A stretch of DNA of 9,664 bases from Octopus sinensis (Eukaryota), in NCBI RefSeq assembly GCF_006345805.1, contig NW_021827874.1, positions 1 to 9,664 on the forward strand. The letters run 5' to 3'. Both the position numbers and the translations under genes were made by a program. Below, one piece after another: positions 1 to 9,664 of the stretch. The notes under the pieces were generated by a model, which worked only from the letters and a program-made list of their open reading frames with translations, made no database searches and was not told where the DNA came from. Each line of letters opens with the position of its first letter. The stretch's first letter is position 1.

Positions 1-142
1 TGCTTATTGTTGTGAATAAACCGGCCGACAAACTTGCCACAGAAGCAGCAGTTGTGATGGATCTTCTCTGGATTGGTGCTCGAAATATTTTGGTAGAAAT
101 GAGGATGTATTTAAGGTAGTTTAGGCGGAGATATTTATACAT
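1..142 (-). CDS. CLPB: First exon of a second CLPB copy (rest of gene beyond the left window edge)
   Basis: ATG at 142..140. Bases 1..286 are identical to 7190..7475, which contain exon 1 of the complete copy. Exon is 22..142 under the GT-donor model. Whether the rest of this copy is intact cannot be seen. Confidence 0.8.
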   Translation of the reverse strand, partial: MYKYLRLNYLKYILISTKIFRAPIQRRSITTAASVASLSAGLFTTIS

Positions 143-417
143 TCAAAAGTGCAACAGAAATGTGAGAATAAATATTTTATTTGAAATAAATTATTTACAT
201 TTATAACTATTTTCAATGCAATAAAACTAGACATTTAGAAATGATGAATTATAAAAATTTTATTTTAAAAAATAGTATGAAAAGAAGACTGTCTCTAAAA
301 ATCTGTATAAGAATATTGAAATATACATTGTTGGGTGGGAGATATTGTGAAAGTAAGATTTTGTCTTTTAGACACCTCCACTCTTCTTGAGATTGCGATT
401 TTTTGGAGGCTGTCTAG

Positions 418-735
418 ATTATTATTATTAAGCACACCGCAAAATAACGTTAATAAAGTTATCTCGCTTGTGCCACCCTTCCTGGATGCGTTTTGTTATC
501 GCTTCAAAGTCCCTCTGTTCCTCGATAGTTTCCTCAGGTGCTTAAGATCGTCTGCTGAATTCAACTCTTTTCAAATCAAAGTTAGGTCTTGATACAGAAG
601 GGTTGCTAGAGTTCCTGGTCTTCCTCGGAAGGTCGTTTCCGGATGAAAAGTGTAGTGGTGTTCCATTGCGAGATTTGCGGGAGTTTTTCTGTCCATTATA
701 GGATGTGACCGAATAAGCCCCATCTACATGGGAGA
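418..735 (-). mobile_element. Old 3' remnant of an RTE-clade non-LTR retrotransposon with (TAA)n tail
   Basis: Minus-strand reading RWGLFGHIL..MDRKTPANLAMEHHY...FRGRPGTLATLLYQDL...SADDLKHLRKLSRNR fits the RTE C-terminal GHILR / RGRP / DL..LR.LA.DR signature. It has an internal stop and frameshifts, a stop at 459..461 and a tail of (ATT)4 at 418..429 on the plus strand. The 5' limit is approximate. Confidence 0.75.
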
Positions 736-2200
736 TGACTAAACATACTTCATTCCCAATTAAAAAATCGTATTTCGATTGATGAACATTCATTTTATTA
801 TTCATCCGTTTAAAATACGATAAATTTAAATTTGGTGGTGAAAAATTCATTAAAAAATCATTATGATCCAAGTTTTCTAGCATGCTTTATACAAATTTAT
901 CTGAAACGGATAAATATTGTATCATTACTTGTAATTGAGGACGATTTGGTCTTCCATAAATGTGTTTGATTTTGTTTTTAGGGCAAAAAGAATCAAGATA
1001 ATTATTCTTAAATTCCGTTTCATTATCTTTTTGTAGAATCTGTAGATCGTCTGTTTTTTCTTTATTAGGTAATAAAAAGTAAAAATAATTTTATTGCAAA
1101 AAATAATTATTAAACGCATGAATGAAATTAAATTTTCGTCAATATTTTTTGTCTTTCAAATAGCATTCACAGTTAATATGCAGAGTGGATTGTGCTTGGT
1201 CAAATAGTCTTAAAATTCACGAATTTTTAATTCAATTTGTGAAGTACAATGAATTGTAATAAAAACACTTTGTGAAGAATTTATTTTATATAAAAGTTTA
1301 TAATTTACCTTCAAATATTCAAAAAGAAATTTTGAATGTTAAACTTTTACGGCCAAAAAATTCATTTGAATCTGCATCATTAATTAAATTTTATGTAAAA
1401 TGATATCAAATATCAAAACATTGGATTATATAAATATATTTTTTGTTTTTGTTTTCAAAAACATGTTTCAAAAACAACAAGGATTTGCATCATGCTAAAT
1501 TTAAAATCAGTTGATCGTAAGAAACCAAATATTAACGATGATATTTTAATATTCAGATTTAGAAAAATTAGTTCTGATAAACAACACCATCCATTAATTG
1601 AATAATTTTTCCCTTATTTTTTTAAATTGATAAGAGGTACGGAAAATATTGTTTAGATACCAAGAAATAAACGTGGCAAAAATGTTTGAAAACTACTGGT
1701 TTAATACATAATGAAAGAAGAGATATACTGTTAAAATTATTGACTTAAACTTTGAATTTTTAAAGTTTTAATTTTGATTTTCTAATTTTTTTAAAATGCT
1801 AAAATCAAAAAAAAATAAAAAATTTCTCAAATAAATCAAAGAATTAGTTTTGAACTTACAAAAAATAAAGTCCATGTTAAATTGAAAGAGATTATTAAGA
1901 AAATGCTTTACAATATTGCGTATTCTGCTTATATGAAAATCTCATTCAGAAACGTGACAAATAAATTGTATTTTAAGAGTTCACGTGGACAACATGTGAA
2001 AATGTGAAAATGTTTAATTTTATTTAAAATAACGAGTCGTTTTTATTGCAGAACATTTACAGTTGTTATTAAATACTTGTCAGAATCATTTGTTGAATAA
2101 TAATTTCACGACTGAAATTTTGGAGGTTTATATTGAAAAAATAATTCAGTAATATATTTATTTTAAGACATTTTTGGATATTTTTTTAGAAATGTTAAGG

Positions 2201-4909
2201 TCAATAAGAAGAAGAACTGATGGCGATCCTGTTTCCCCTCACTATTGCTTGGGACACGTTCTGGAGGAGCCATCTTGTCTCCAGAGGATTGTGTGTTCTC
2301 AAGGTCTTGAAACGTCCAATACACTTGAGGAAGCACAACGACTCCTTCCCAATCGATTCCAGGGTTTCGACAGCAACCGCCGGAAAACGTAACGATCGGT
2401 GAGCCCATCATATTTCTTCTTCTTGATGTCCTTTGCTTTATCTGCAGCTGTGCCGGCATTGCAGGCACTTTCCAACATGTTTGTCTTGGACAAGGAGCCG
2501 GAACATGTTGAATCCCATACGAGAGGCTTTCCTTCCAAAAACGGAAAGATAGTCATCCCGTCTGGGCGTTTTCCATCTCCTCGGTCCAATCCAGGTGGTT
2601 CCAGCACTGATGGGAATCCGATTGAATCTAGAGCTCTTCTTATAACGTCGTTGAGAGCTGAATGACTCGGGAATCTACCAGCGCTTTTACGACAGGAAAG
2701 ATGGTGAAGTCCAAATTGATCAATCGATACACCACAGCGGAATTTGTGTGGTTCACAAACTTTGAGACCGATACGTAGACATATACCAACTCGCAGTGTG
2801 TCAGAATCCAAGAAAGTCCCCAAGCTTCCGATCGGGAAGGCTTCCAACCATTCTCCACTCCCCGTGGACCTCCCGGCAAGCAAGCATGCTCTACGATGTT
2901 GATTCGATTCTTTAGGAGACTTTCGAAGCGACCTTCGCACACAATCTTGTCATAACTCTTCTGCAAAGAGAAGTCCGACGGCAGCTTCGATTCGTTTGCG
3001 CTCAACTGTCAAAGTAGGCAGTCATCTTAGGTATTGAAGATTCGGGGAGGAGATGGAGAATCTTCCGAACCAGAGTTTGACTGCTGAACAGTGAAGACAG
3101 GAATGCGGGGCGGATCACATCGATAGGATTTCGGATGCCAAGACCTCCAAAGGAGACAGGAAGGGAAGCTTGTTTCCAGCCTTGATCGTCGAATTTGATG
3201 TTTATGATGCGTTCGGTTGTTTTCCGGAAAAGGACATTAATAGAATGAAGTTGATCATTTTCTAAGAAGCAGGGTGACCCCCGTAGCACATGATTTAATT
3301 TTTGGATGCCAAGGGCATTTTTGAGCAGGAAGAAGGCTCTTTTCCAGTAGCATTTCCTTAGTTTCAAGAGCGTCCTTGATTCCAACATCTGTCAATGGGC
3401 AGCCTAATATCTCCAGACTGATACTAGGCGTGATGGACGCTCCGGGAATTATCTCACTGAAAAAGGAAACAATAACCTCGAATTCATCACGACGGAACCT
3501 AAAATTAATGATTTCACTTTTTGAAGTGTTCAGTATAAGACCAACGCATTCAAGTCTCGGAATTAGGTCAACGAACGTCTTGAAAACAGTTTCGGGATGA
3601 CCTCCGAGGGTGCAGTAATCAAGGTACCAAACATTCAGCGGGGTTGAGCAGCTCTTAACAATGTGATCAATTCCAAGGCAAAAGAGAACAGGACCCAAAG
3701 GGTCTCTTTGTTGAACCCCCGAGGACGAGGAAATATGGTAAGGGCCATGGACGAGGGTGGATGGTTTCGCGTATGAGCTAAGAACATAGTTGTATATTTC
3801 GGGACAAAATTCAAGACTGTTCTGCAATATAGAGTCGCGGCGAATAGTGTTAAATGCATTACGGATGTCCAATTTAACAATAATATGGGGAGTATTGTTG
3901 TTTATGTGGTTGAATTCACGGATTCCGTGTATTGCAGCTTCACAACCTCCTGGGGTACCAACTCCAAGTTGAATAGGGAACATTAGCAGGCTTAATGTTG
4001 GGATAACAGCCCTGCATGCCATCTTTGAAGCTAGCCGACGGAAGACAGATCCAACTGCAATGGGTCGAACAACCCCTCCTTTCTTTTCTAGCGTGATCAG
4101 TTTTGCAGAGAAGAAAAAGTGACGGACTAGCTCTGGAAGATCTCCCAAAAGCATTCTGTTGATAAGAGAACAGATCGACGAAAGAAGCCGAGATCCCGAG
4201 TTTCCAGTGTCCGGCGAGATCAAGTCCTTAAGATGTCCTGGTCGCAGCCTGTCTAGATTTGCCCCGCTGCTTGGAGCGAAGGATAAAATTCCGGCTTTAA
4301 TGTCATCGTCCGAGACAGACAATGGCTGAAGAATCCCTGGGAGAGGTGGATTTCGTGAGTCGCTTGGAGCGGCCGGATGTCGATCCAGGAGAGCTTCATG
4401 AGTCTCAATTGAAGGCTTCAGGAATGGACTATCACTGGAGAGCACTCTCAAAGCCGAGCGTATTCCCCCTTCCAATAATTTAGAATGAATGGTCCTCCGT
4501 AAGTGTATCTCTTCAGAAAGTGTATCCTTTGGTATCTTTCGATGACTCTTCACAGTAGCCGGTTGTAATGGGGGATCAATCACCGTAAGTCCGGAATCAA
4601 ACAGGCGTATGTTTTCTTTGACGGACGATGACAAAGATCTACCACGAATTGTAGAACCAGAAGGTAAGCCCAAAACACAAGGGACAAAACAAAGCAGGCG
4701 GACCCAGTAACTGATGTCGTTCGAATGCTGGCTGAAAGGCAGTCGGCAACAGTTAAACGAGCTCCTCTGGGGATCCTTCTTGAGGATGACCATTTATAAA
4801 TCGTGTCAAGTAGGCGTTCGTGATCCAACGGTACAGTGCAGGCAGTTTGATTGAAGGAGCAGTGCCAGCTGGAAGGCATAGGTGACAGGGTAATCTCCAA
4901 TTTTAGGCA
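2201..4909 (-). pseudogene. Frameshifted RT-zinc knuckle-RLE polyprotein of the CRE-like element
   Basis: ORF-track pieces 4580..4900, 3255..4793, 3002..3388, 2640..3005, 2299..2940 plus a final frame to 2201. Consecutive pieces are in different frames (five shifts, near 4710, 3337, 3005, 2890, 2375). Catalytic YLDD reads TAC CTT GAT TAC (YLDY, 3615..3626). QGDP reads QRDP, and the first knuckle Cys reads Phe. Confidence 0.9.
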
Positions 4910-5037
4910 TACTATAAATTTCGACGTATAAGCAATAGATTTTAATTATTTTTTCATTTTTTATTAATTTAAGTTAATTTTAATGGATTTGTCTATTGAA
5001 TTGTCTGGATTTTCATATTTTTTAAGAATAAAAATTA

Positions 5038-5200
5038 AGCCAATGGGAAATGTTAGTAAGGGCCTTCTTAGAAACTCCTCGCATGACATGTGAAGGAGCC
5101 TTGAGCACGCTGAACAAGTGATCGTTCTCTTTCTCGTGTTAATTATGTTGCATTTTTCGCACGGATGGCTGTTTTTCTTATTTACCTCATTAATCTTCAT
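5038..5200 (-). pseudogene. Broken PHD-finger-like coding segment
   Basis: ATG at 5200, then C-x2-C-x11-C-x2-C-x4-H-x2-C (CEKCNIINTRKRTITCSACSRLLHMSC). A one-base shift continues GVSKKALTNISHWL, the expected run-up to the final W-x-C-x2-C, and the sequence is then cut by AT-rich DNA. Confidence 0.6.
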
Positions 5201-5263
5201 TGCACTGACTCTGTATTGAAAATAGTGAATGCACCACACCACGTTAAAATTATAATTTCAAAA

Positions 5264-5359: not shown

Positions 5360-7331
5360 CTACCAATATCCATGAGATGAATCTGGTGAAAACTCGAGTT
5401 TAATTCTTCCACAAACATTTTCCGAACTATTTCCATCAATTTTGAGAGTAATGGTGGATCCCTCTTTAATTAACTCCTGTTCATGTGCAAAGGCAATCTG
5501 ACTAATAATCCTCCTCTCAATCTCATGTTTGATTGACCTTGCTCCATAGTGAATGTCGTACCCATCAATGAGCACCTCCACCACAGAACTGTCCCACTCG
5601 AGTGTCATCTTATTCGACTCCATCGCCTTTTTGGCCCAAAACTCGAGTTCCTTGACAACCAACCTTCTCAACTCGTATTTAGAAAACGGCAAAAAGTAGA
5701 CAAATTCGTTTATTCTCCCCAAAAACTCATCCCTTTTGAAATGCCTCTGCAAATCACCGCAAGTAAAAACCTTAAGAATAGGCCGGACTTGGCTGTCCTT
5801 GAATTCCCTCGAAACAGTAACCAACTCAAACACTTCTGAGAATATCAAAAAGCCCTAAACCACTAGATCCAGCCCCCTGTCTTTGCTCGGCCTCCTCTCT
5901 CAACTGCCCCCCATACTCAGCAATTTCCTCACTGGCGAGATTGGAGGTCATGACAAATATAGCGTCCTTGCACTCGATTGTGTTGCCCTTTCCGTCAGTC
6001 AGTCTCCCCTACATTCCCCAATACACTCACCTCGTCGAATAATTGGAGCATTATAGTCAGAACATCGGGATGAGCCTTTTCTATCTCATCAAAGAGGACG
6101 ACGGAATCAGGACACTCCTTTAGTAGATTCGTCAACTGTCCTCCCTCCTCGTGACCCACGTACCCGGGAGGAGACCCTATGAACTTGGCCACTTCGTGTC
6201 GATGCTGGAATTCAGACATGTCCATTCGAATAAAGGCTTTCTTGTCTCCGTGAAGATATTTTGCCATCTGTTTGGCCAATTCTGTCTTGCCGATCCCCGA
6301 AGAGCCGAGAAAAAGAAAAACAAGTGGATGGTCTCGGTCTACCCAACCATTTTGTTTCCGTCTTATAGCTACCATATCAACGGAAAGAAAAACCCGAGGA
6401 TACCGCGGAAATGGCACTCTCCTGCCCCACAATCGACTCTCTCAGCACATCCTCTATCAGGTGCTCACGTCGCTCTTCCGCAGACTTGGAATTTCGTTTT
6501 TTAAGGACCTATCATTTGGGTTCCGCTTTTAACCTCTTTTGAGTGGTTTTCCAACAATTTCTTAACTTTTTCACTTCTGGCGTAGTCCGCCGGTTTGTGG
6601 CCGCTTTCGTTCTCTTCCAAAGGGTCCGCTCCTGTCATGACTGAGGGATGAGACCTGCTTCAAGCAGAGCTTCCACAACCGGGATGCTGTTCGATGCTAC
6701 TGCGTAATGAAGGGCCGTACAGCCACGGAAATTCCCATACGGAGACACTCTTCCACTGAAGCAATCATCTCTGTCCATTTGGACTATTTTAATTTATTAT
6801 TTATTTAAATAAAATATTAAATTAAATTATATGCTGCTTGTGGAGCATTAAATATAGCGTGGATTACCCTGAAGAGACACAAGTCCGAAAAATGAGGATG
6901 ATTCAATGACACTCGAGAACTCGTCCTTAAGGTTGGGATCAGCACCGGCAGCCAGCAACAGTTTTGCCATTCTGTCTCAAATCATACTTGGAGTACTCAG
7001 TTTGACCGTTGATGGCTGCAGTCATGAGCGGAGTCCACCCAAGAGGGTGTCGCCGATTGACATCCACGGTCCCCGAGTTGATAATACTCTGAAATTCGCT
7101 GATTCTTCCGTAGCGAATGGTTTGGAATATGTAGTCCTTGTCTAACAGTCTTTATTAGGGTATTTTGCCATTTGGGAAAGTTGAGAATGTGCTTATTGTT
7201 GTGAATAAACCGGCCGACAAACTTGCCACAGAAGCAGCAGTTGTGATGGATCTTCTCTGGATTGGTGCTCGAAATATTTTGGTAGAAATGAGGATGTATT
7301 TAAGGTAGTTTAGGCGGAGATATTTATACAT
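5360..7331 (-). CDS. CLPB: Mitochondrial disaggregase CLPB/Skd3 (ankyrin repeats + one AAA+ NBD), 10 exons, about 549 aa (563 aa if intron 1 is the 27-nt GC-AG variant)
   Basis: Hand-spliced exons, 5' to 3': 7331-7211, 7141-6997, 6971-6868, 6783-6655, 6631-6534, 6508-6394, 6368-6031, 6008-5861, 5835-5771, 5746-5360 (total 1650 nt, frame preserved at every junction). N-terminus [31 protein letters not shown] is basic and acid-free (mitochondrial presequence-like). Ankyrin motifs: [32 protein letters not shown] and [11 protein letters not shown]...[25 protein letters not shown]+ motifs: Walker A GSSGIGKT, pore loop GYVG, Walker B VVLFDE, sensor-1 [11 protein letters not shown], sensor-2 YGARS. 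The ANK + single NBD layout matches animal CLPB as I recall it. Confidence 0.96.
5747..5770 (-). other. CLPB intron 9, 24 nt (in-frame, stop-free)
   Basis: GTTTTTACTTGCGGTGATTTGCAG. Removal gives [20 protein letters not shown], matching the recalled CLPB motif [20 protein letters not shown] without an 8-aa insertion. Confidence 0.85.
5836..5860 (-). other. CLPB intron 8, 25 nt
   Basis: GTTTAGGGCTTTTTGATATTCTCAG. Removal joins [15 protein letters not shown] in frame. Confidence 0.85.
6009..6030 (-). other. CLPB intron 7, 22 nt
   Basis: GTGAGTGTATTGGGGAATGTAG. Removal restores the invariant Clp motif [14 protein letters not shown]. Confidence 0.96.
6369..6393 (-). other. CLPB intron 6, 25 nt
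   Basis: GTTTTTCTTTCCGTTGATATGGTAG. Removal gives [22 protein letters not shown]. Confidence 0.92.
6509..6533 (-). other. CLPB intron 5, 25 nt
   Basis: GTTAAAAGCGGAACCCAAATGATAG. Removal joins ENHSKE to [14 protein letters not shown] in frame. Confidence 0.85.
6632..6654 (-). other. CLPB intron 4, 23 nt
   Basis: GTCTCATCCCTCAGTCATGACAG. Removal restores LLEAGADPL. Confidence 0.92.
6784..6867 (-). other. CLPB intron 3, 84 nt
   Basis: GTAATCC...TTAAAATAG. It has an in-frame stop, and removal joins VSLQ-V-QMDRDD in frame. Confidence 0.9.
6972..6996 (-). other. CLPB intron 2, 25 nt
   Basis: GTACTCCAAGTATGATTTGAGACAG. Removal gives [19 protein letters not shown], a gapless ankyrin repeat. Confidence 0.9.
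7142..7210 (-). other. CLPB intron 1 (69-nt GT-AG, or 27-nt GC-AG at 7142..7168)
   Basis: Acceptor GACTGTTAG|AC at 7142 is fixed by the downstream frame. Both donors (G|GTTTAT at 7210, G|GCAAAA at 7168) are phase 1. In-frame TAA TAA at 7152..7157 makes splicing obligatory. Confidence 0.65.
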
Positions 7332-7476
7332 TCAAAAGTGCAACAGAAATGTGAGAATAAATATTTTATTTGAAATAAATTATTTACATTTATAACTATT
7401 TTCAATGCAATAAAACTAGACATTTAGAAATGATGAATTATAAAAATTTTATTTTAAAAAATAGTATGAAAAGAAA

Positions 7477-7768
7477 TAAGCACACTGCAAAATAACGTTA
7501 GTAAAGTTATCTCGCTTGTGCCACCCTCTCCTGGATGCGTTTTGTTAATTGCTTCAAAGTCCCTTTGTTCCTCGATAGTTCCCTCAGGTGCTTAAGATCG
7601 TCTGCTGATTTCAACCCTTTTCCAATCAAAGTTAGGTCTTGATACAGAAGGGTTGCTAGAGTAATTCGTGCTCTTCCGAATGAGGAGCGTAGTGATGTTC
7701 CATTGCGAGATTTGCAGTTTTCCTGTGTATTCTTAGGATGTGACCGAATAAGTCCCATTTAGATCGTC
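7477..7768 (-). mobile_element. Duplicated copy of the RTE remnant (tail and 5' flank deleted)
   Basis: Aligns with 429..723. Reads KWDLFGHILRIHRKTANLAMEHHY, then shifts into ITLATLLYQDLTLIGKGLKSADDLKHLRELSRNKG (end of ORF 7507..7758). Confidence 0.75.
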
Positions 7769-7923
7769 TGTATTTTCTTTATTAGGTATTAAAAAATAAA
7801 AAAATATAAATAATTTTATTGCAAACAAAATTATTAAACACATGAGTGAAATTAAATTTTTGTCAATATTCCTTGTTTTTTTAAATAGCATTCACAGTTA
7901 ATATGCAGAGAGATTGTGCTTAG

Positions 7924-7929
<6 letters not shown>

Positions 7930-7967
<38 letters not shown>

Positions 7968-8106
7968 TGTAATTAACAAATAGTTATTAACTAACTAAAT
8001 TCCCGGCATCGTAAATGGAAACACAGTTTCCACGTACTATGGCCAAGGAAATCCTTTCGAAAAGCCACTTGGACTCGCGTGGGTCTCCCCGTTTATGGGA
8101 AAGCCA
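7930..8106 (-). mobile_element. Young 5'-truncated CRE-like retrotransposon copy (177 nt) with poly(A) tail and 11-bp TSD
   Basis: TSD CTTAGTCAAAT at 7919..7929 and 8107..8117. T36 at 7929..7964 is poly(A) on the minus strand. Open frame 8106..7987 reads WLSHKRGDPRESKWLFERISLAIVRGNCVSIYDAGNLVS*, the conserved CRE RLE C-terminus. A single empty site CTTGGTCAAAT lies at 1195..1205 in the other copy. Confidence 0.92.
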
Positions 8107-9491
8107 CTTAGTCAAATAGTCTTTAAAATTCACAAATTTTTAATTCAATTTGTGAAGAATTTATTTTATATAAAAGTTTATAATTTACCTCAAATATTCA
8201 AAAAGAATTTTTTGAATGTTAAACTTTTACGAGTCAAAAAATTCATTTGAATCTGCATCATTAATTAAATTTTATGTAAAATGATATCAAATATCAAAAC
8301 ATTGGATTATATAAATATATTTTTTGTTTTTGTTTTCAAAAACATATTTTTGCAAACAAGGATTTTCATCATGCTAAATTTAAAATCAGTTGATCGTAAG
8401 AAACTAAATATCAACGATGATATTTGGATGTATCTATAATTTTAATATTCAGATTTAGAAAAATTAGTTCTGATAAACAACACCATCCATTAATTGAATA
8501 ATTTTTCCCTTATTTTTTTAAATTGATAAGAGGTACGGAAAATATTGTTTAGATACCAAGAAATAAACGTGGCAAAAATGTTTGAAAACTACTGGTTTAA
8601 TACATAATGAAAGAAGAGATATACTGTTAAAATTATTGACTTAAACTTTAAATTTTTAAAGTTTTAATTTTGATTTTCTAATTTTTTAGAATGCTAAAAT
8701 CAAAAAAATAAAAATTTCTCAAATAAATCAAAGAATTAGTTTTGAGCTCACAAAAAAATAAAGTCCATGTTATTATAGATTGAGAGAGATTATTAAGAAA
8801 ATGCTTTGCAATATTGCGTATTCTGCTTATATGAAAATCTCATTCAGAAACGTGACAAATAAATTGTACTTTAAGAGTTCACGTGGACAACATGTGAAAA
8901 AGCTTAATTTGATCTAAAATAACGAGTCGTTTTTATTGCAGAACATTTATAAGTTGTTATTAAATACTTGTCAGAATCATATGTTGAATAATAATTTCAC
9001 GACTGAAATTTTGGAGGTTTATATTGAAAAAATAAAAATAATTCAGTAATATTTTTATTTTAAGCCATTTTTTGGATATTTTTTTAGAAAGATATTTATG
9101 CATTGTATTAAAAATTGAATACATTGCTTGATTTTAAAATATCTCGAACAAAAAATTTTGCAATTTTATTTGTATTTACAAAAATATTTGAATATAAATC
9201 GTTATAATAAAAAAAGAAATGTCCATGATTAAATTAAATTCAGACCTTTTTAACTTTTCGATCCGAAAGATAGTGTTCGGGTACCAGGAAATGAATAAAT
9301 TACTTCATTAAAATAAGTCACGATGAAAAGAAATGATTGTGCTTAATTAAATATTCGGATATTGTCCTTTGAAGAAGTGGATAAGGTGAAATCAAATAAT
9401 AGAAATTGTTTTATTTAATAAAATGAAAATTCGGCATACAACCAAAGTATAAAAGAAACTAATAATCATTAAGTAATGTTTAGGGCAATTT

Positions 9492-9588
9492 TTTTCAGGC
9501 ACTTAAAATTTATTTTTAGGACCTTAAAAATAGGCATTTTAGGACTTTATTTTTAATTTTTAGGACTTTATTCTACATTTTTAGGCAC
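9492..9588. repeat. Cluster of six degenerate TTTTAGG(A/C)(C/A) motifs
   Basis: TTTTCAGGCAC 9492, TTTTTAGGACC 9513, AAAATAGGCAT 9527, TTTTAGGACTTTAT 9537, TTTTTAGGACTTTAT 9557, TTTTTAGGCAC 9578. Confidence 0.6.
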
Positions 9589-9664
9589 ATTTTAATAAGG
9601 TATTAAATCAAAAAGTCGTAAAAAATTATTTGTTATAGTAAGGTATTAAATAATTTTTGACATT

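What the first reader, a model, noticed from the sequence alone, without database searches (positions are those of the whole stretch)
5747..6996. Animal CLPB gene packed with 22-25 nt spliceosomal introns
Seen: seven GT-AG introns of 25, 23, 25, 25, 22, 25 and 24 nt, each needed to keep frame or to restore a conserved motif. Donors share little beyond GT and there is no consistent polypyrimidine tract. Four of the seven have TGAT with the A at -8 to -11 from the 3' end, a candidate minimal branch point. Established: ANK + single-AAA+ Skd3 is the animal-type CLPB, and typical animal introns are far longer than this. Inference: the host is a genome-reduced animal with miniature introns (Myxozoa or Dicyemida are candidates) and a modified intron-definition spliceosome.
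Basis: partly seen in the sequence, partly recalled or inferred. Interest (0 to 1): 0.7.

Follow-up and report, generated by a model that had tools for sequence, protein, structure and literature searches.

The report
Parasite CLPB gene mislabelled as octopus
The seven 22-25-base introns are real features of an intact animal CLPB gene, but the contig is filed under Octopus sinensis and almost certainly comes from a dicyemid kidney parasite, a group already known for such tiny introns.

Summary
On the minus strand (7331 to 5360) lies an intact 549-aa ANK + single-AAA+ CLPB/Skd3 gene. It has the seven GT-AG introns at exactly the stated coordinates (25, 23, 25, 25, 22, 25, 24 nt). The finding did not list two longer introns, of 69 and 84 nt.

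Six of the seven tiny introns, and the 84-nt one, sit at the same alignment column and phase as introns of 135-13,933 nt in the CLPB genes of Lottia, Owenia and Ptychodera. They are therefore shrunken ancestral introns, not insertions or errors.

The window is the whole 9664-bp contig VCDQ01008815.1 of the Octopus sinensis assembly. RefSeq annotates it as a truncated 243-aa octopus protein whose start codon lies inside a tiny intron. The protein falls outside the cephalopod and mollusc clade on a long branch.

Introns under 30 nt are reported in animals only for dicyemids and myxobolid myxozoans. Dicyema japonicum is collected from O. sinensis kidneys. The best reading is dicyemid DNA carried into the octopus assembly.

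The phenomenon has been published since 2007. The practical points that I found reported nowhere are the contamination and the mis-annotation. The proposed TGAT branch site is modestly supported (corrected p about 0.03, n = 7). The "modified spliceosome" idea is untested.

The parts
5360..7331 (-). Complete CLPB/Skd3 gene: 10 exons, 9 introns, 549 aa, ATG at 7331-7329, stop TAG at 5362-5360. Exons are 7331-7211, 7141-6997, 6971-6868, 6783-6655, 6631-6534, 6508-6394, 6368-6031, 6008-5861, 5835-5771 and 5746-5360.
   Evidence: splicing and translation; unbroken alignment to human CLPB, E 2e-190; Ank, AAA_2 and ClpB_D2-small domains.
7142..7210 (-). Intron 1, 69 nt, GT-AG, phase 1, 33% GC, with in-frame TAATAA on read-through.
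   Evidence: It lies at or within 4-5 alignment columns of a phase-1 intron in Lottia, Owenia and Ptychodera: an exact match in the alignment, offset in the gapped alignment. An alternative 81-nt or shifted 69-nt boundary also keeps the frame.
6972..6996 (-). Intron 2, 25 nt, GTACTC...ACAG, phase 2. TGAT with the A at -11.
   Evidence: Same column and phase as introns of 326, 2091 and 1532 nt in Lottia, Owenia and Ptychodera.
6784..6867 (-). Intron 3, 84 nt, GT-AG, phase 1, 19% GC, with several in-frame stops.
   Evidence: Same column and phase as introns of 308, 13933 and 3287 nt.
6632..6654 (-). Intron 4, 23 nt, GTCTCA...ACAG, phase 1.
   Evidence: Same column and phase as introns of 598, 314 and 1523 nt.
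6509..6533 (-). Intron 5, 25 nt, GTTAAA...ATAG, phase 0.
   Evidence: Same column and phase as introns of 1108, 530 and 388 nt.
6369..6393 (-). Intron 6, 25 nt, GTTTTT...GTAG, phase 1. TGAT with the A at -9. It contains the ATG (6375-6373) that the RefSeq model uses as its start codon.
   Evidence: Same column and phase as introns of 338, 289 and 704 nt.
6009..6030 (-). Intron 7, 22 nt, GTGAGT...GTAG, phase 0. It splits LQLFDE|GRLTDG and is the only donor close to the metazoan consensus (8 of 9).
   Evidence: Same column and phase as introns of 386, 1161 and 999 nt.
5836..5860 (-). Intron 8, 25 nt, GTTTAG...TCAG, phase 1. TGAT with the A at -10. Its boundaries are the least certain: 28- and 31-nt alternatives also keep the frame.
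   Evidence: It is three columns from a phase-1 intron present in all three reference species, in a variable, gapped stretch.
5747..5770 (-). Intron 9, 24 nt, GTTTTT...GCAG, phase 0, 3n and stop-free. TGAT with the A at -8.
   Evidence: Same column and phase as introns of 405 and 260 nt in Lottia and Owenia. Retention would insert VFTCGDLQ into RPILK|RHFKRDEF.
5360..6375 (-). CDS of the RefSeq model XP_029654221.1 (243 aa, 'caseinolytic peptidase B protein homolog [Octopus sinensis]'). It starts inside intron 6 and joins donor 6030 to acceptor 5747 as one 284-nt intron, which deletes 71 codons of the AAA+ domain.
   Evidence: The P0251 sequence runs ...LQLFDE|RHFKRDEF..., and its locus L003 is this contig reversed, with the gene at 3290-4305.
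1..286 (-). Second copy of CLPB exon 1 (ATG at 142, donor after base 22) plus 144 nt upstream, 100% identical to 7190-7475 and cut by the contig end.

Best explanation
The window is a small contig of dicyemid DNA. The most likely source is Dicyema japonicum or another dicyemid of the octopus renal sac. It was co-extracted with host DNA, assembled into the Octopus sinensis genome as unplaced contig VCDQ01008815.1, and annotated as an octopus gene.

It carries an intact nuclear gene for the mitochondrial disaggregase CLPB/Skd3. The protein has a short basic presequence, four ankyrin repeats, one NBD2-type AAA+ module and a D2-small domain.

Nine ancestral bilaterian introns are kept. Seven of them have shrunk to 22-25 nt, the size class typical of dicyemid genes.

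How they are probably removed (inferred, not shown): an ordinary U2-type GT-AG spliceosome recognises the whole intron at once. The signals available to it are few:
- a G at exon position -1 (8 of 9 introns);
- the GT and AG dinucleotides;
- a yUnAy-like TGAT or TGAY element whose A lies 15-17 nt from the 5' end and 8-11 nt from the 3' end;
- the narrow length itself;
- no polypyrimidine tract.

Standard annotation pipelines do not allow such introns, which explains the truncated RefSeq model.
For: Shown here:
- Gene model and coordinates.
- Unbroken alignment to human CLPB and domain content.
- 7 exact and 2 near matches of intron position and phase with Lottia, Owenia and Ptychodera, whose introns at those sites are 135-13,933 nt.
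- The window is contig VCDQ01008815.1 of GCA_006345805.1, Octopus sinensis, 9664 bp.
- The protein is 55% identical to the octopod Argonauta CLPB. Argonauta is 71-75% identical to a set of unnamed transcript-derived sequences that group with it.
- In an NJ tree the mollusc clade (81% bootstrap) and the Argonauta clade (100%) both exclude the window sequence. It sits on a long branch and joined that clade in 0 of 200 replicates.
- TGAT enrichment.

From the literature:
- Animal introns under 30 nt are known only in dicyemids and myxobolids, with reduced 5' and 3' signals and weak A residues in place of a clear branch site (PMC13644364).
- Dicyema introns measure 26.2 +/- 1.9 nt and sit at conserved positions (PMC2222250). 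The median is 27 nt in Dicyema sp. (PMC6543705).
- The D. japonicum genome is 36.7% GC and 49% repeats, with many LINE ORF2 copies. Its specimens were taken from Octopus sinensis, and host and parasite DNA could not be fully separated (PMC6736024).
- The window is 35.7% GC and carries a degenerate non-LTR element.
Against: - No dicyemid reference sequence could be compared directly. The collections searched returned nothing closer than 75% identity over part of the C-terminal exon, 69% or less over most of it. The only 100% match is the RefSeq model from this contig.
- Octopus genomes have a similar overall GC, to my recollection, so composition does not discriminate.
- I could not retrieve the O. 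sinensis orthologue itself, only that of the octopod Argonauta.
- No RNA evidence was available, so splicing is inferred from conservation.
- The seven introns average 24.1 nt, slightly below the published dicyemid values of 26-27 nt.
- Position +3 of the donor is mostly T here, whereas the published D. japonicum logo shows 'GTa'. The sample is small.
Confidence: 0.87

Rival explanations
1. The contig is real octopus nuclear DNA: either a divergent CLPB paralogue, or dicyemid DNA that has integrated into the host genome by horizontal transfer.
For: The record and the RefSeq protein are filed as Octopus sinensis. Overall GC is compatible with either organism.
Against: - The contig is an unplaced 9.6-kb piece.
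- The gene is compact (1.97 kb, against 8-27 kb in Lottia, Owenia and Ptychodera).
- It falls outside the cephalopod and mollusc clade on a long branch.
- No animal outside dicyemids and myxobolids is reported to splice introns under 30 nt (PMC13644364), so an intact reading frame that depends on seven such introns would not be maintained in an octopus.
Confidence: 0.04
2. The contig comes from a myxobolid myxozoan, the other animal lineage with introns of 22-27 nt.
For: Intron sizes of 22-25 nt match the myxobolid medians of 22-27 nt, and myxobolid signals are similarly reduced (PMC13644364).
Against: - Myxosporeans alternate between annelids and fish or other vertebrates (PMC13644364), whereas the sample is an octopus, the standard dicyemid host (PMC6736024).
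- The closest proteins are bilaterian at 53-62% identity. No cnidarian appeared among the best 120 hits, and no cnidarian or myxozoan CLPB could be included in the tree.
Confidence: 0.04
3. The contig comes from a non-animal eukaryote with tiny introns, such as a ciliate or another protist.
For: Introns of about 25 nt are typical of Paramecium (cited in PMC2222250). ANK + AAA CLPB relatives also occur outside animals, in Ichthyophonus, Mucorales and an aphelid.
Against: - Identity is highest to animal CLPBs.
- Nine intron positions are shared with bilaterian genes.
- The exons contain no in-frame TAA or TAG, and the frame ends on TAG, so there is no sign of a ciliate genetic code.
- Coding GC is 47%.
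Confidence: 0.02
4. The segments are not introns. They are disabling insertions in a pseudogene, or assembly or long-read errors.
For: The contig is short, unplaced and internally repetitive. The neighbouring retroelement has broken frames.
Against: - All nine segments begin with GT and end with AG.
- Seven coincide exactly with ancestral intron sites.
- All ten exons are free of stops and frameshifts, and the spliced product keeps every conserved motif.
- Random insertions or indel errors would not produce this.
Confidence: 0.01

Closest known systems
Ultra-short spliceosomal introns of dicyemids (Dicyema acuticephalum, D. japonicum, Dicyema sp.; PMC2222250, PMC6543705, PMC6736024, PMC13644364; Ogino et al. 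2010 as cited there)
   Same: - GT-AG introns in a narrow band below 30 nt.
- They sit at evolutionarily conserved intron positions.
- The 5' and 3' consensus is weak and there is no polypyrimidine tract.
- A minority of longer, AT-rich introns occurs in the same gene.
- The source is an octopus host.
   Different: The seven introns average 24.1 nt, against published values of 26-27 nt. Donor position +3 is mostly T here. The species was not identified by a direct sequence match.
Ultra-short introns of myxobolid myxozoans (Henneguya salminicola, Thelohanellus kitauei, Myxobolus spp.; PMC13644364)
   Same: Median lengths of 22-27 nt, conserved positions, signals reduced to little more than GT and AG, and weak A residues upstream of the AG.
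   Different: These are cnidarian parasites of fish and annelids, with no link to an octopus sample. The window protein shows no cnidarian affinity among the hits available.
Human CLPB / Skd3 mitochondrial disaggregase (PDB 7xbk, 7ttr, 7us2)
   Same: Ankyrin repeats with the insertion between repeats 2 and 3, one NBD2-type AAA+ domain, a D2-small domain, Walker A GSSGIGKT and the [14 protein letters not shown] motif. The alignment is unbroken at E 2e-190.
   Different: The N-terminus is much shorter: 40 aa before the ankyrin domain, and no recognisable counterpart of the long presequence and hydrophobic stretch. The C-terminal tail also differs.
Tiny introns of ciliates and the chlorarachniophyte nucleomorph (Paramecium about 25 nt; Bigelowiella nucleomorph 18-21 nt; Stentor 15-16 nt; cited in PMC2222250 and PMC13644364)
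   Same: They are in or near this length class and have minimal signals. They show that a U2-type spliceosome can work at this size.
   Different: The lineages are unrelated. The window gene uses the standard genetic code and has an animal intron map.

Membership tests
CLPB / Skd3 (ANK + single AAA+ disaggregase) | Ankyrin-repeat domain N-terminal to the ATPase | tested here: met
   Pfam Ank, Ank_2 and Ank_5, two stretches, E 6e-19. Aligns to the ankyrin domain of 7xbk_A.
CLPB / Skd3 (ANK + single AAA+ disaggregase) | A single NBD2-type AAA+ module with a ClpB D2-small domain | tested here: met
   AAA_2 at E 5e-52 over residues 254-435 and ClpB_D2-small over 443-521. Walker A GSSGIGKT and Walker [11 protein letters not shown] are visible in the alignment.
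CLPB / Skd3 (ANK + single AAA+ disaggregase) | Mitochondrial targeting and disaggregase activity | not testable with these tools
   The first 40 residues are basic, hydroxylated and free of acidic residues. This is compatible with a presequence, but the judgement rests on composition alone.
Dicyemid-type ultra-short spliceosomal introns | GT-AG boundaries and a narrow length band below 30 nt | tested here: met
   Seven introns of 22-25 nt, all GT-AG. Published Dicyema values: 26.2 +/- 1.9 nt (PMC2222250) and a median of 27 nt (PMC6543705).
Dicyemid-type ultra-short spliceosomal introns | They occupy conserved (ancestral) intron positions | tested here: met
   Six of the seven tiny introns, plus the 84-nt one, share column and phase with Lottia, Owenia and/or Ptychodera introns.
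Dicyemid-type ultra-short spliceosomal introns | Reduced splice-site consensus and no polypyrimidine tract | tested here: met
   Donor matches to MAG|GTRAGT are 3-8 of 9. Pyrimidine fraction before the AG is 0.33-0.80. The sample is only nine introns.
Dicyemid-type ultra-short spliceosomal introns | The segments are removed from mature mRNA | not testable with these tools
   No transcript of this gene was found in the collections. Splicing is inferred from frame, homology and position.
Dicyemida as source organism | Sample association with a cephalopod host | tested here: met
   The contig belongs to the Octopus sinensis assembly GCA_006345805.1. D. japonicum is collected from O. sinensis renal sacs (PMC6736024).
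Dicyemida as source organism | The gene is not the host's own orthologue | tested here: met
   55% identity to Argonauta CLPB. It was excluded from the cephalopod clade in 200 of 200 bootstrap replicates. The O. sinensis orthologue itself was not retrieved.
Dicyemida as source organism | Nucleotide match to a dicyemid genome or transcriptome | not testable with these tools
   No dicyemid genome is in the searchable collections, and the protein searches returned no named dicyemid sequence.
Myxobolidae as source organism | Cnidarian affinity of the protein and a fish or annelid sample | tested here: inconclusive
   The sample is an octopus. The best hits are bilaterian. No cnidarian or myxozoan CLPB could be obtained for the tree.

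The most novel reading that the evidence does not exclude
The contig is truly part of the octopus genome. In that case a piece of dicyemid DNA, with an intact CLPB gene, its tiny introns and a neighbouring retroelement, passed from the kidney parasite into its cephalopod host. A milder variant is that the DNA comes from an unsequenced dicyemid species whose introns use a fixed 15-17-nt spacing from the 5' splice site to a TGAT branch site, acting as a length ruler.
Probability: 0.04. Interest if true: 0.75.

Novelty: new member of a known kind. Interest (0 to 1): 0.27.

Why it matters
For intron biology this is one more example of a known phenomenon. It shows within a single conserved gene that dicyemid mini-introns are ancestral introns reduced to about 24 nt, while the same introns in Lottia, Owenia and Ptychodera span 135 nt to 14 kb.

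The practical points are:
- A RefSeq assembly of Octopus sinensis contains parasite DNA.
- The pipeline turned this gene into a wrong 243-aa "octopus" protein, because it cannot model introns under 30 nt.
- Such records can mislead orthology, gene-family and horizontal-transfer analyses in cephalopods.
- Conversely, cephalopod assemblies could be mined for dicyemid sequence.

The TGAT element at a fixed distance from the 5' end is a small, testable lead on how branch sites are chosen in introns this short.

Tried and rejected
- Exact look-ups of the two largest window ORFs found nothing. The contig was identified only through the 100% hit P0251 in the exhaustive protein search.
- A search with the C-terminal exon for close relatives found nothing above 75% identity. 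I followed three of those hits. P0211 is an ordinary exon-limited ORF from an assembly I could not identify. P0124 and P0127 sit on a compact CLPB locus of about 1.9 kb in two large NCBI assemblies whose DNA could not be fetched. None could be assigned to a dicyemid.
- A search with Haliotis CLPB for the octopus orthologue returned the octopod Argonauta and a group of unnamed transcript-derived sequences that cluster with it, but not O. sinensis itself.
- Rfam and tRNA scans of the window were empty.
- A circular or rolling-circle origin for the 7-kb direct repeat was rejected. Only 1-286 is identical to its copy, the rest is 85-92% identical with indels, and 2193-2475 has no partner at 9091-9664. 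The circular DNAs described in dicyemids are under 2 kb and carry only mitochondrial genes (PMC6543705).
- A ciliate genetic code was rejected. The TAATAA after the first exon lies inside a 69-nt GT-AG intron, and the exons contain no in-frame TAA or TAG.
- A U12-type reading of the GTATCCT motif at 6403 was rejected. Using it as the donor with the 6369 acceptor breaks the frame (worked out by hand from the sequence).
- GC content was dropped as evidence between octopus and dicyemid, because the two genomes are similar.
Full report
**What is there**

The coding strand is the minus strand. Three-frame translation of 7350-5300 shows CLPB-like blocks that hop between frames. Removing eight GT-AG segments joins them into one frame. 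A ninth, 69-nt GT-AG intron links this frame to an upstream ATG at 7331.

The seven segments in the finding are at exactly the stated coordinates:

| Donor..acceptor | Length (nt) |
|---|---|
| 6996-6972 | 25 |
| 6654-6632 | 23 |
| 6533-6509 | 25 |
| 6393-6369 | 25 |
| 6030-6009 | 22 |
| 5860-5836 | 25 |
| 5770-5747 | 24 |

The gene also has two longer introns that the finding does not mention: 7210-7142 (69 nt) and 6867-6784 (84 nt, 19% GC).

**Is it a real CLPB?**

- The spliced protein aligns without a break to human CLPB (7xbk_A) over 483 residues, E 2e-190. Every junction falls inside a continuous alignment.
- Pfam finds ankyrin repeats, one AAA_2 domain and ClpB_D2-small.
- The best database hits are bilaterian CLPBs at 57-62% identity, from a hemichordate, echinoderms, molluscs, an annelid and vertebrates.
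- The same architecture also turns up in Ichthyophonus, Mucorales fungi and an aphelid. "Animal-type" is therefore only approximately right.

**Are the segments introns?**

- Read-through gives a stop for eight of the nine. The 24-nt segment is 3n and stop-free, and would insert eight residues into the invariant RPILK|RHFKRDEF motif.
- The strongest evidence is comparative. I fetched the CLPB loci of Lottia gigantea, Owenia fusiformis and Ptychodera flava. I derived their exact exon chains and projected all introns onto one protein alignment.
- Seven of the nine window introns share column and phase with introns in at least two of those species.
- The remaining two are in the same phase, 3-5 columns from a reference intron, in gapped stretches.
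- With about 16 reference sites among about 1650 slots, this has a chance probability of about 1e-13.
- At these sites the reference introns measure 135-13,933 nt. The window gene spans 1969 nt, against 8-27 kb in the three reference species.
- Five to seven further ancestral introns have been lost from the window gene.
- Frame-compatible alternative boundaries exist for a few introns. Only at 5860-5836 does homology fail to choose between them.

**Signals**

- Donors match MAG|GTRAGT at 3-8 of 9 positions. Only 6030 (GAG|GTGAGT) looks canonical.
- Exon position -1 is G in 8 of 9 introns.
- There is no consistent pyrimidine tract.
- TGAT occurs in 5 of the 7 tiny introns. In four of them the A lies at -8 to -11 from the 3' end and 15-17 nt from the 5' end. 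TGAY occurs in 6 of 7.
- Interior shuffles reach these TGAT and TGAY counts with p = 4e-4 or less. Allowing for any 4-mer raises this to p = 0.028. The branch-site idea is plausible, but it rests on seven introns.

**Where the DNA comes from**

- The exhaustive protein search returned one 100% match, P0251. This is XP_029654221.1, "caseinolytic peptidase B protein homolog [Octopus sinensis]", on a contig of 9664 bp.
- The contig is VCDQ01008815.1 of GCA_006345805.1, so the window is that whole contig.
- The RefSeq model has only 243 aa. Its ATG (6375-6373) lies inside the 25-nt intron 6393-6369. It splices donor 6030 directly to acceptor 5747 and drops 71 codons.
- The full protein is not an octopus orthologue. 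It is 55% identical to the octopod Argonauta hians CLPB. Argonauta in turn is 71-75% identical to a group of unnamed transcript-derived sequences.
- In a neighbour-joining tree, molluscs (81% bootstrap) and the clade of Argonauta plus those unnamed sequences (100%) both exclude the window sequence. It sits on a long branch among other fast-evolving animals and never joined that clade in 200 replicates.

**Literature**

- A 2026 survey of 51 animal genomes found introns under 30 nt only in myxobolid myxozoans and Dicyema japonicum. Both have reduced 5' and 3' motifs and weak A residues upstream of the AG (PMC13644364).
- Dicyema introns of 26.2 +/- 1.9 nt at conserved positions were described in 2007 (PMC2222250).
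- Dicyema sp. has a median intron of 27 nt (PMC6543705).
- The D. japonicum genome is 36.7% GC and 49% repeats, with many LINE ORF2 copies. Its specimens were collected from the renal sac of Octopus sinensis, and host and parasite cells could not be fully separated (PMC6736024).
- The window is 35.7% GC and carries a degenerate R2-like non-LTR element.
- I found no paper in the held library that reports dicyemid sequence in the O. sinensis assembly.

**Conclusion**

The source is best explained as a dicyemid parasite whose DNA entered the octopus assembly (confidence about 0.87).

Rival readings:
- Real octopus DNA, including horizontal transfer: about 0.04.
- A myxozoan: about 0.04.
- A protist with tiny introns: about 0.02.
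- A pseudogene or assembly artefact: about 0.01.

Limits of the evidence:
- Splicing itself, the branch site and the nature of the spliceosome are inferred.
- No RNA data and no dicyemid reference genome were within reach.

The phenomenon is published, so the novelty is low. The contamination and the resulting RefSeq mis-annotation are the practical result.

Noticed in passing
window 1-2192 and 7190-9090: There is a large direct repeat. Bases 1-286 are 100% identical to 7190-7475 and contain a second copy of CLPB exon 1 (ATG at 142) with its upstream region, cut by the contig start. The rest of the upstream region repeats at 85-92% identity with indels: 429-729 matches 7477-7764, 1043-1205 matches 7760-7929, and 1266-2192 matches 8146-9090. 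This may be a tandem or segmental duplication that includes CLPB, or an assembly artefact. It is not a simple circle.
   Followed up: partly
window 2299-5242, minus strand: A non-LTR retroelement lies directly downstream of CLPB. ORF 3255-4793 has an RVT_1 domain and weak matches to R2 retrotransposon proteins (E 2e-4). ORF 2299-2940 has a Cys/His cluster and an RPD...D motif that resemble a restriction-like endonuclease. ORF 4964-5242 has a PHD-like zinc finger below the Pfam cut-off. The ORFs lie in different frames, so this is a decayed copy or the contig carries indel errors.
   Followed up: partly
window 5360-6375, minus strand: The RefSeq protein XP_029654221.1 (243 aa) is a mis-prediction. 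Its start codon lies inside a 25-nt intron, and one 284-nt 'intron' (6030 to 5747) replaces two tiny introns and two exons. It is labelled Octopus sinensis.
   Followed up: yes
window 335-900 and 7477-7764: Two related minus-strand ORFs lie inside the repeated upstream region: 542-883 (113 aa) and 7507-7758 (83 aa). GC here is slightly raised (0.35-0.38) and there is no Pfam hit. They could be a small unknown gene or repeat-derived ORFs.
   Followed up: no
proteins P0248, P0260 and P0305: Full-length ANK + AAA+ CLPB relatives, 41-51% identical to the window protein, occur in Ichthyophonus hoferi, Mucorales (Thamnidium, Mucor) and Amoeboaphelidium. The Skd3 architecture is therefore not confined to animals and choanoflagellates.
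   Followed up: partly
proteins P0124 and P0127, assemblies GCA_041442895.1 and GCA_041447055.1: Among the closest relatives of the C-terminal exon (69% identity), P0127 belongs to another very compact CLPB locus of about 1.9 kb on a 10.9-kb gene-dense contig. Its C-terminal ORF runs uninterrupted across three ancestral intron sites. P0124 is a near-identical ORF on a 667-bp contig in the second assembly. The organism is unknown and the DNA could not be retrieved.
   Followed up: partly
window 6785-6829: An AT-only palindrome (arms of about 25 nt, 80-87% complementary) sits inside the 84-nt intron.
   Followed up: no
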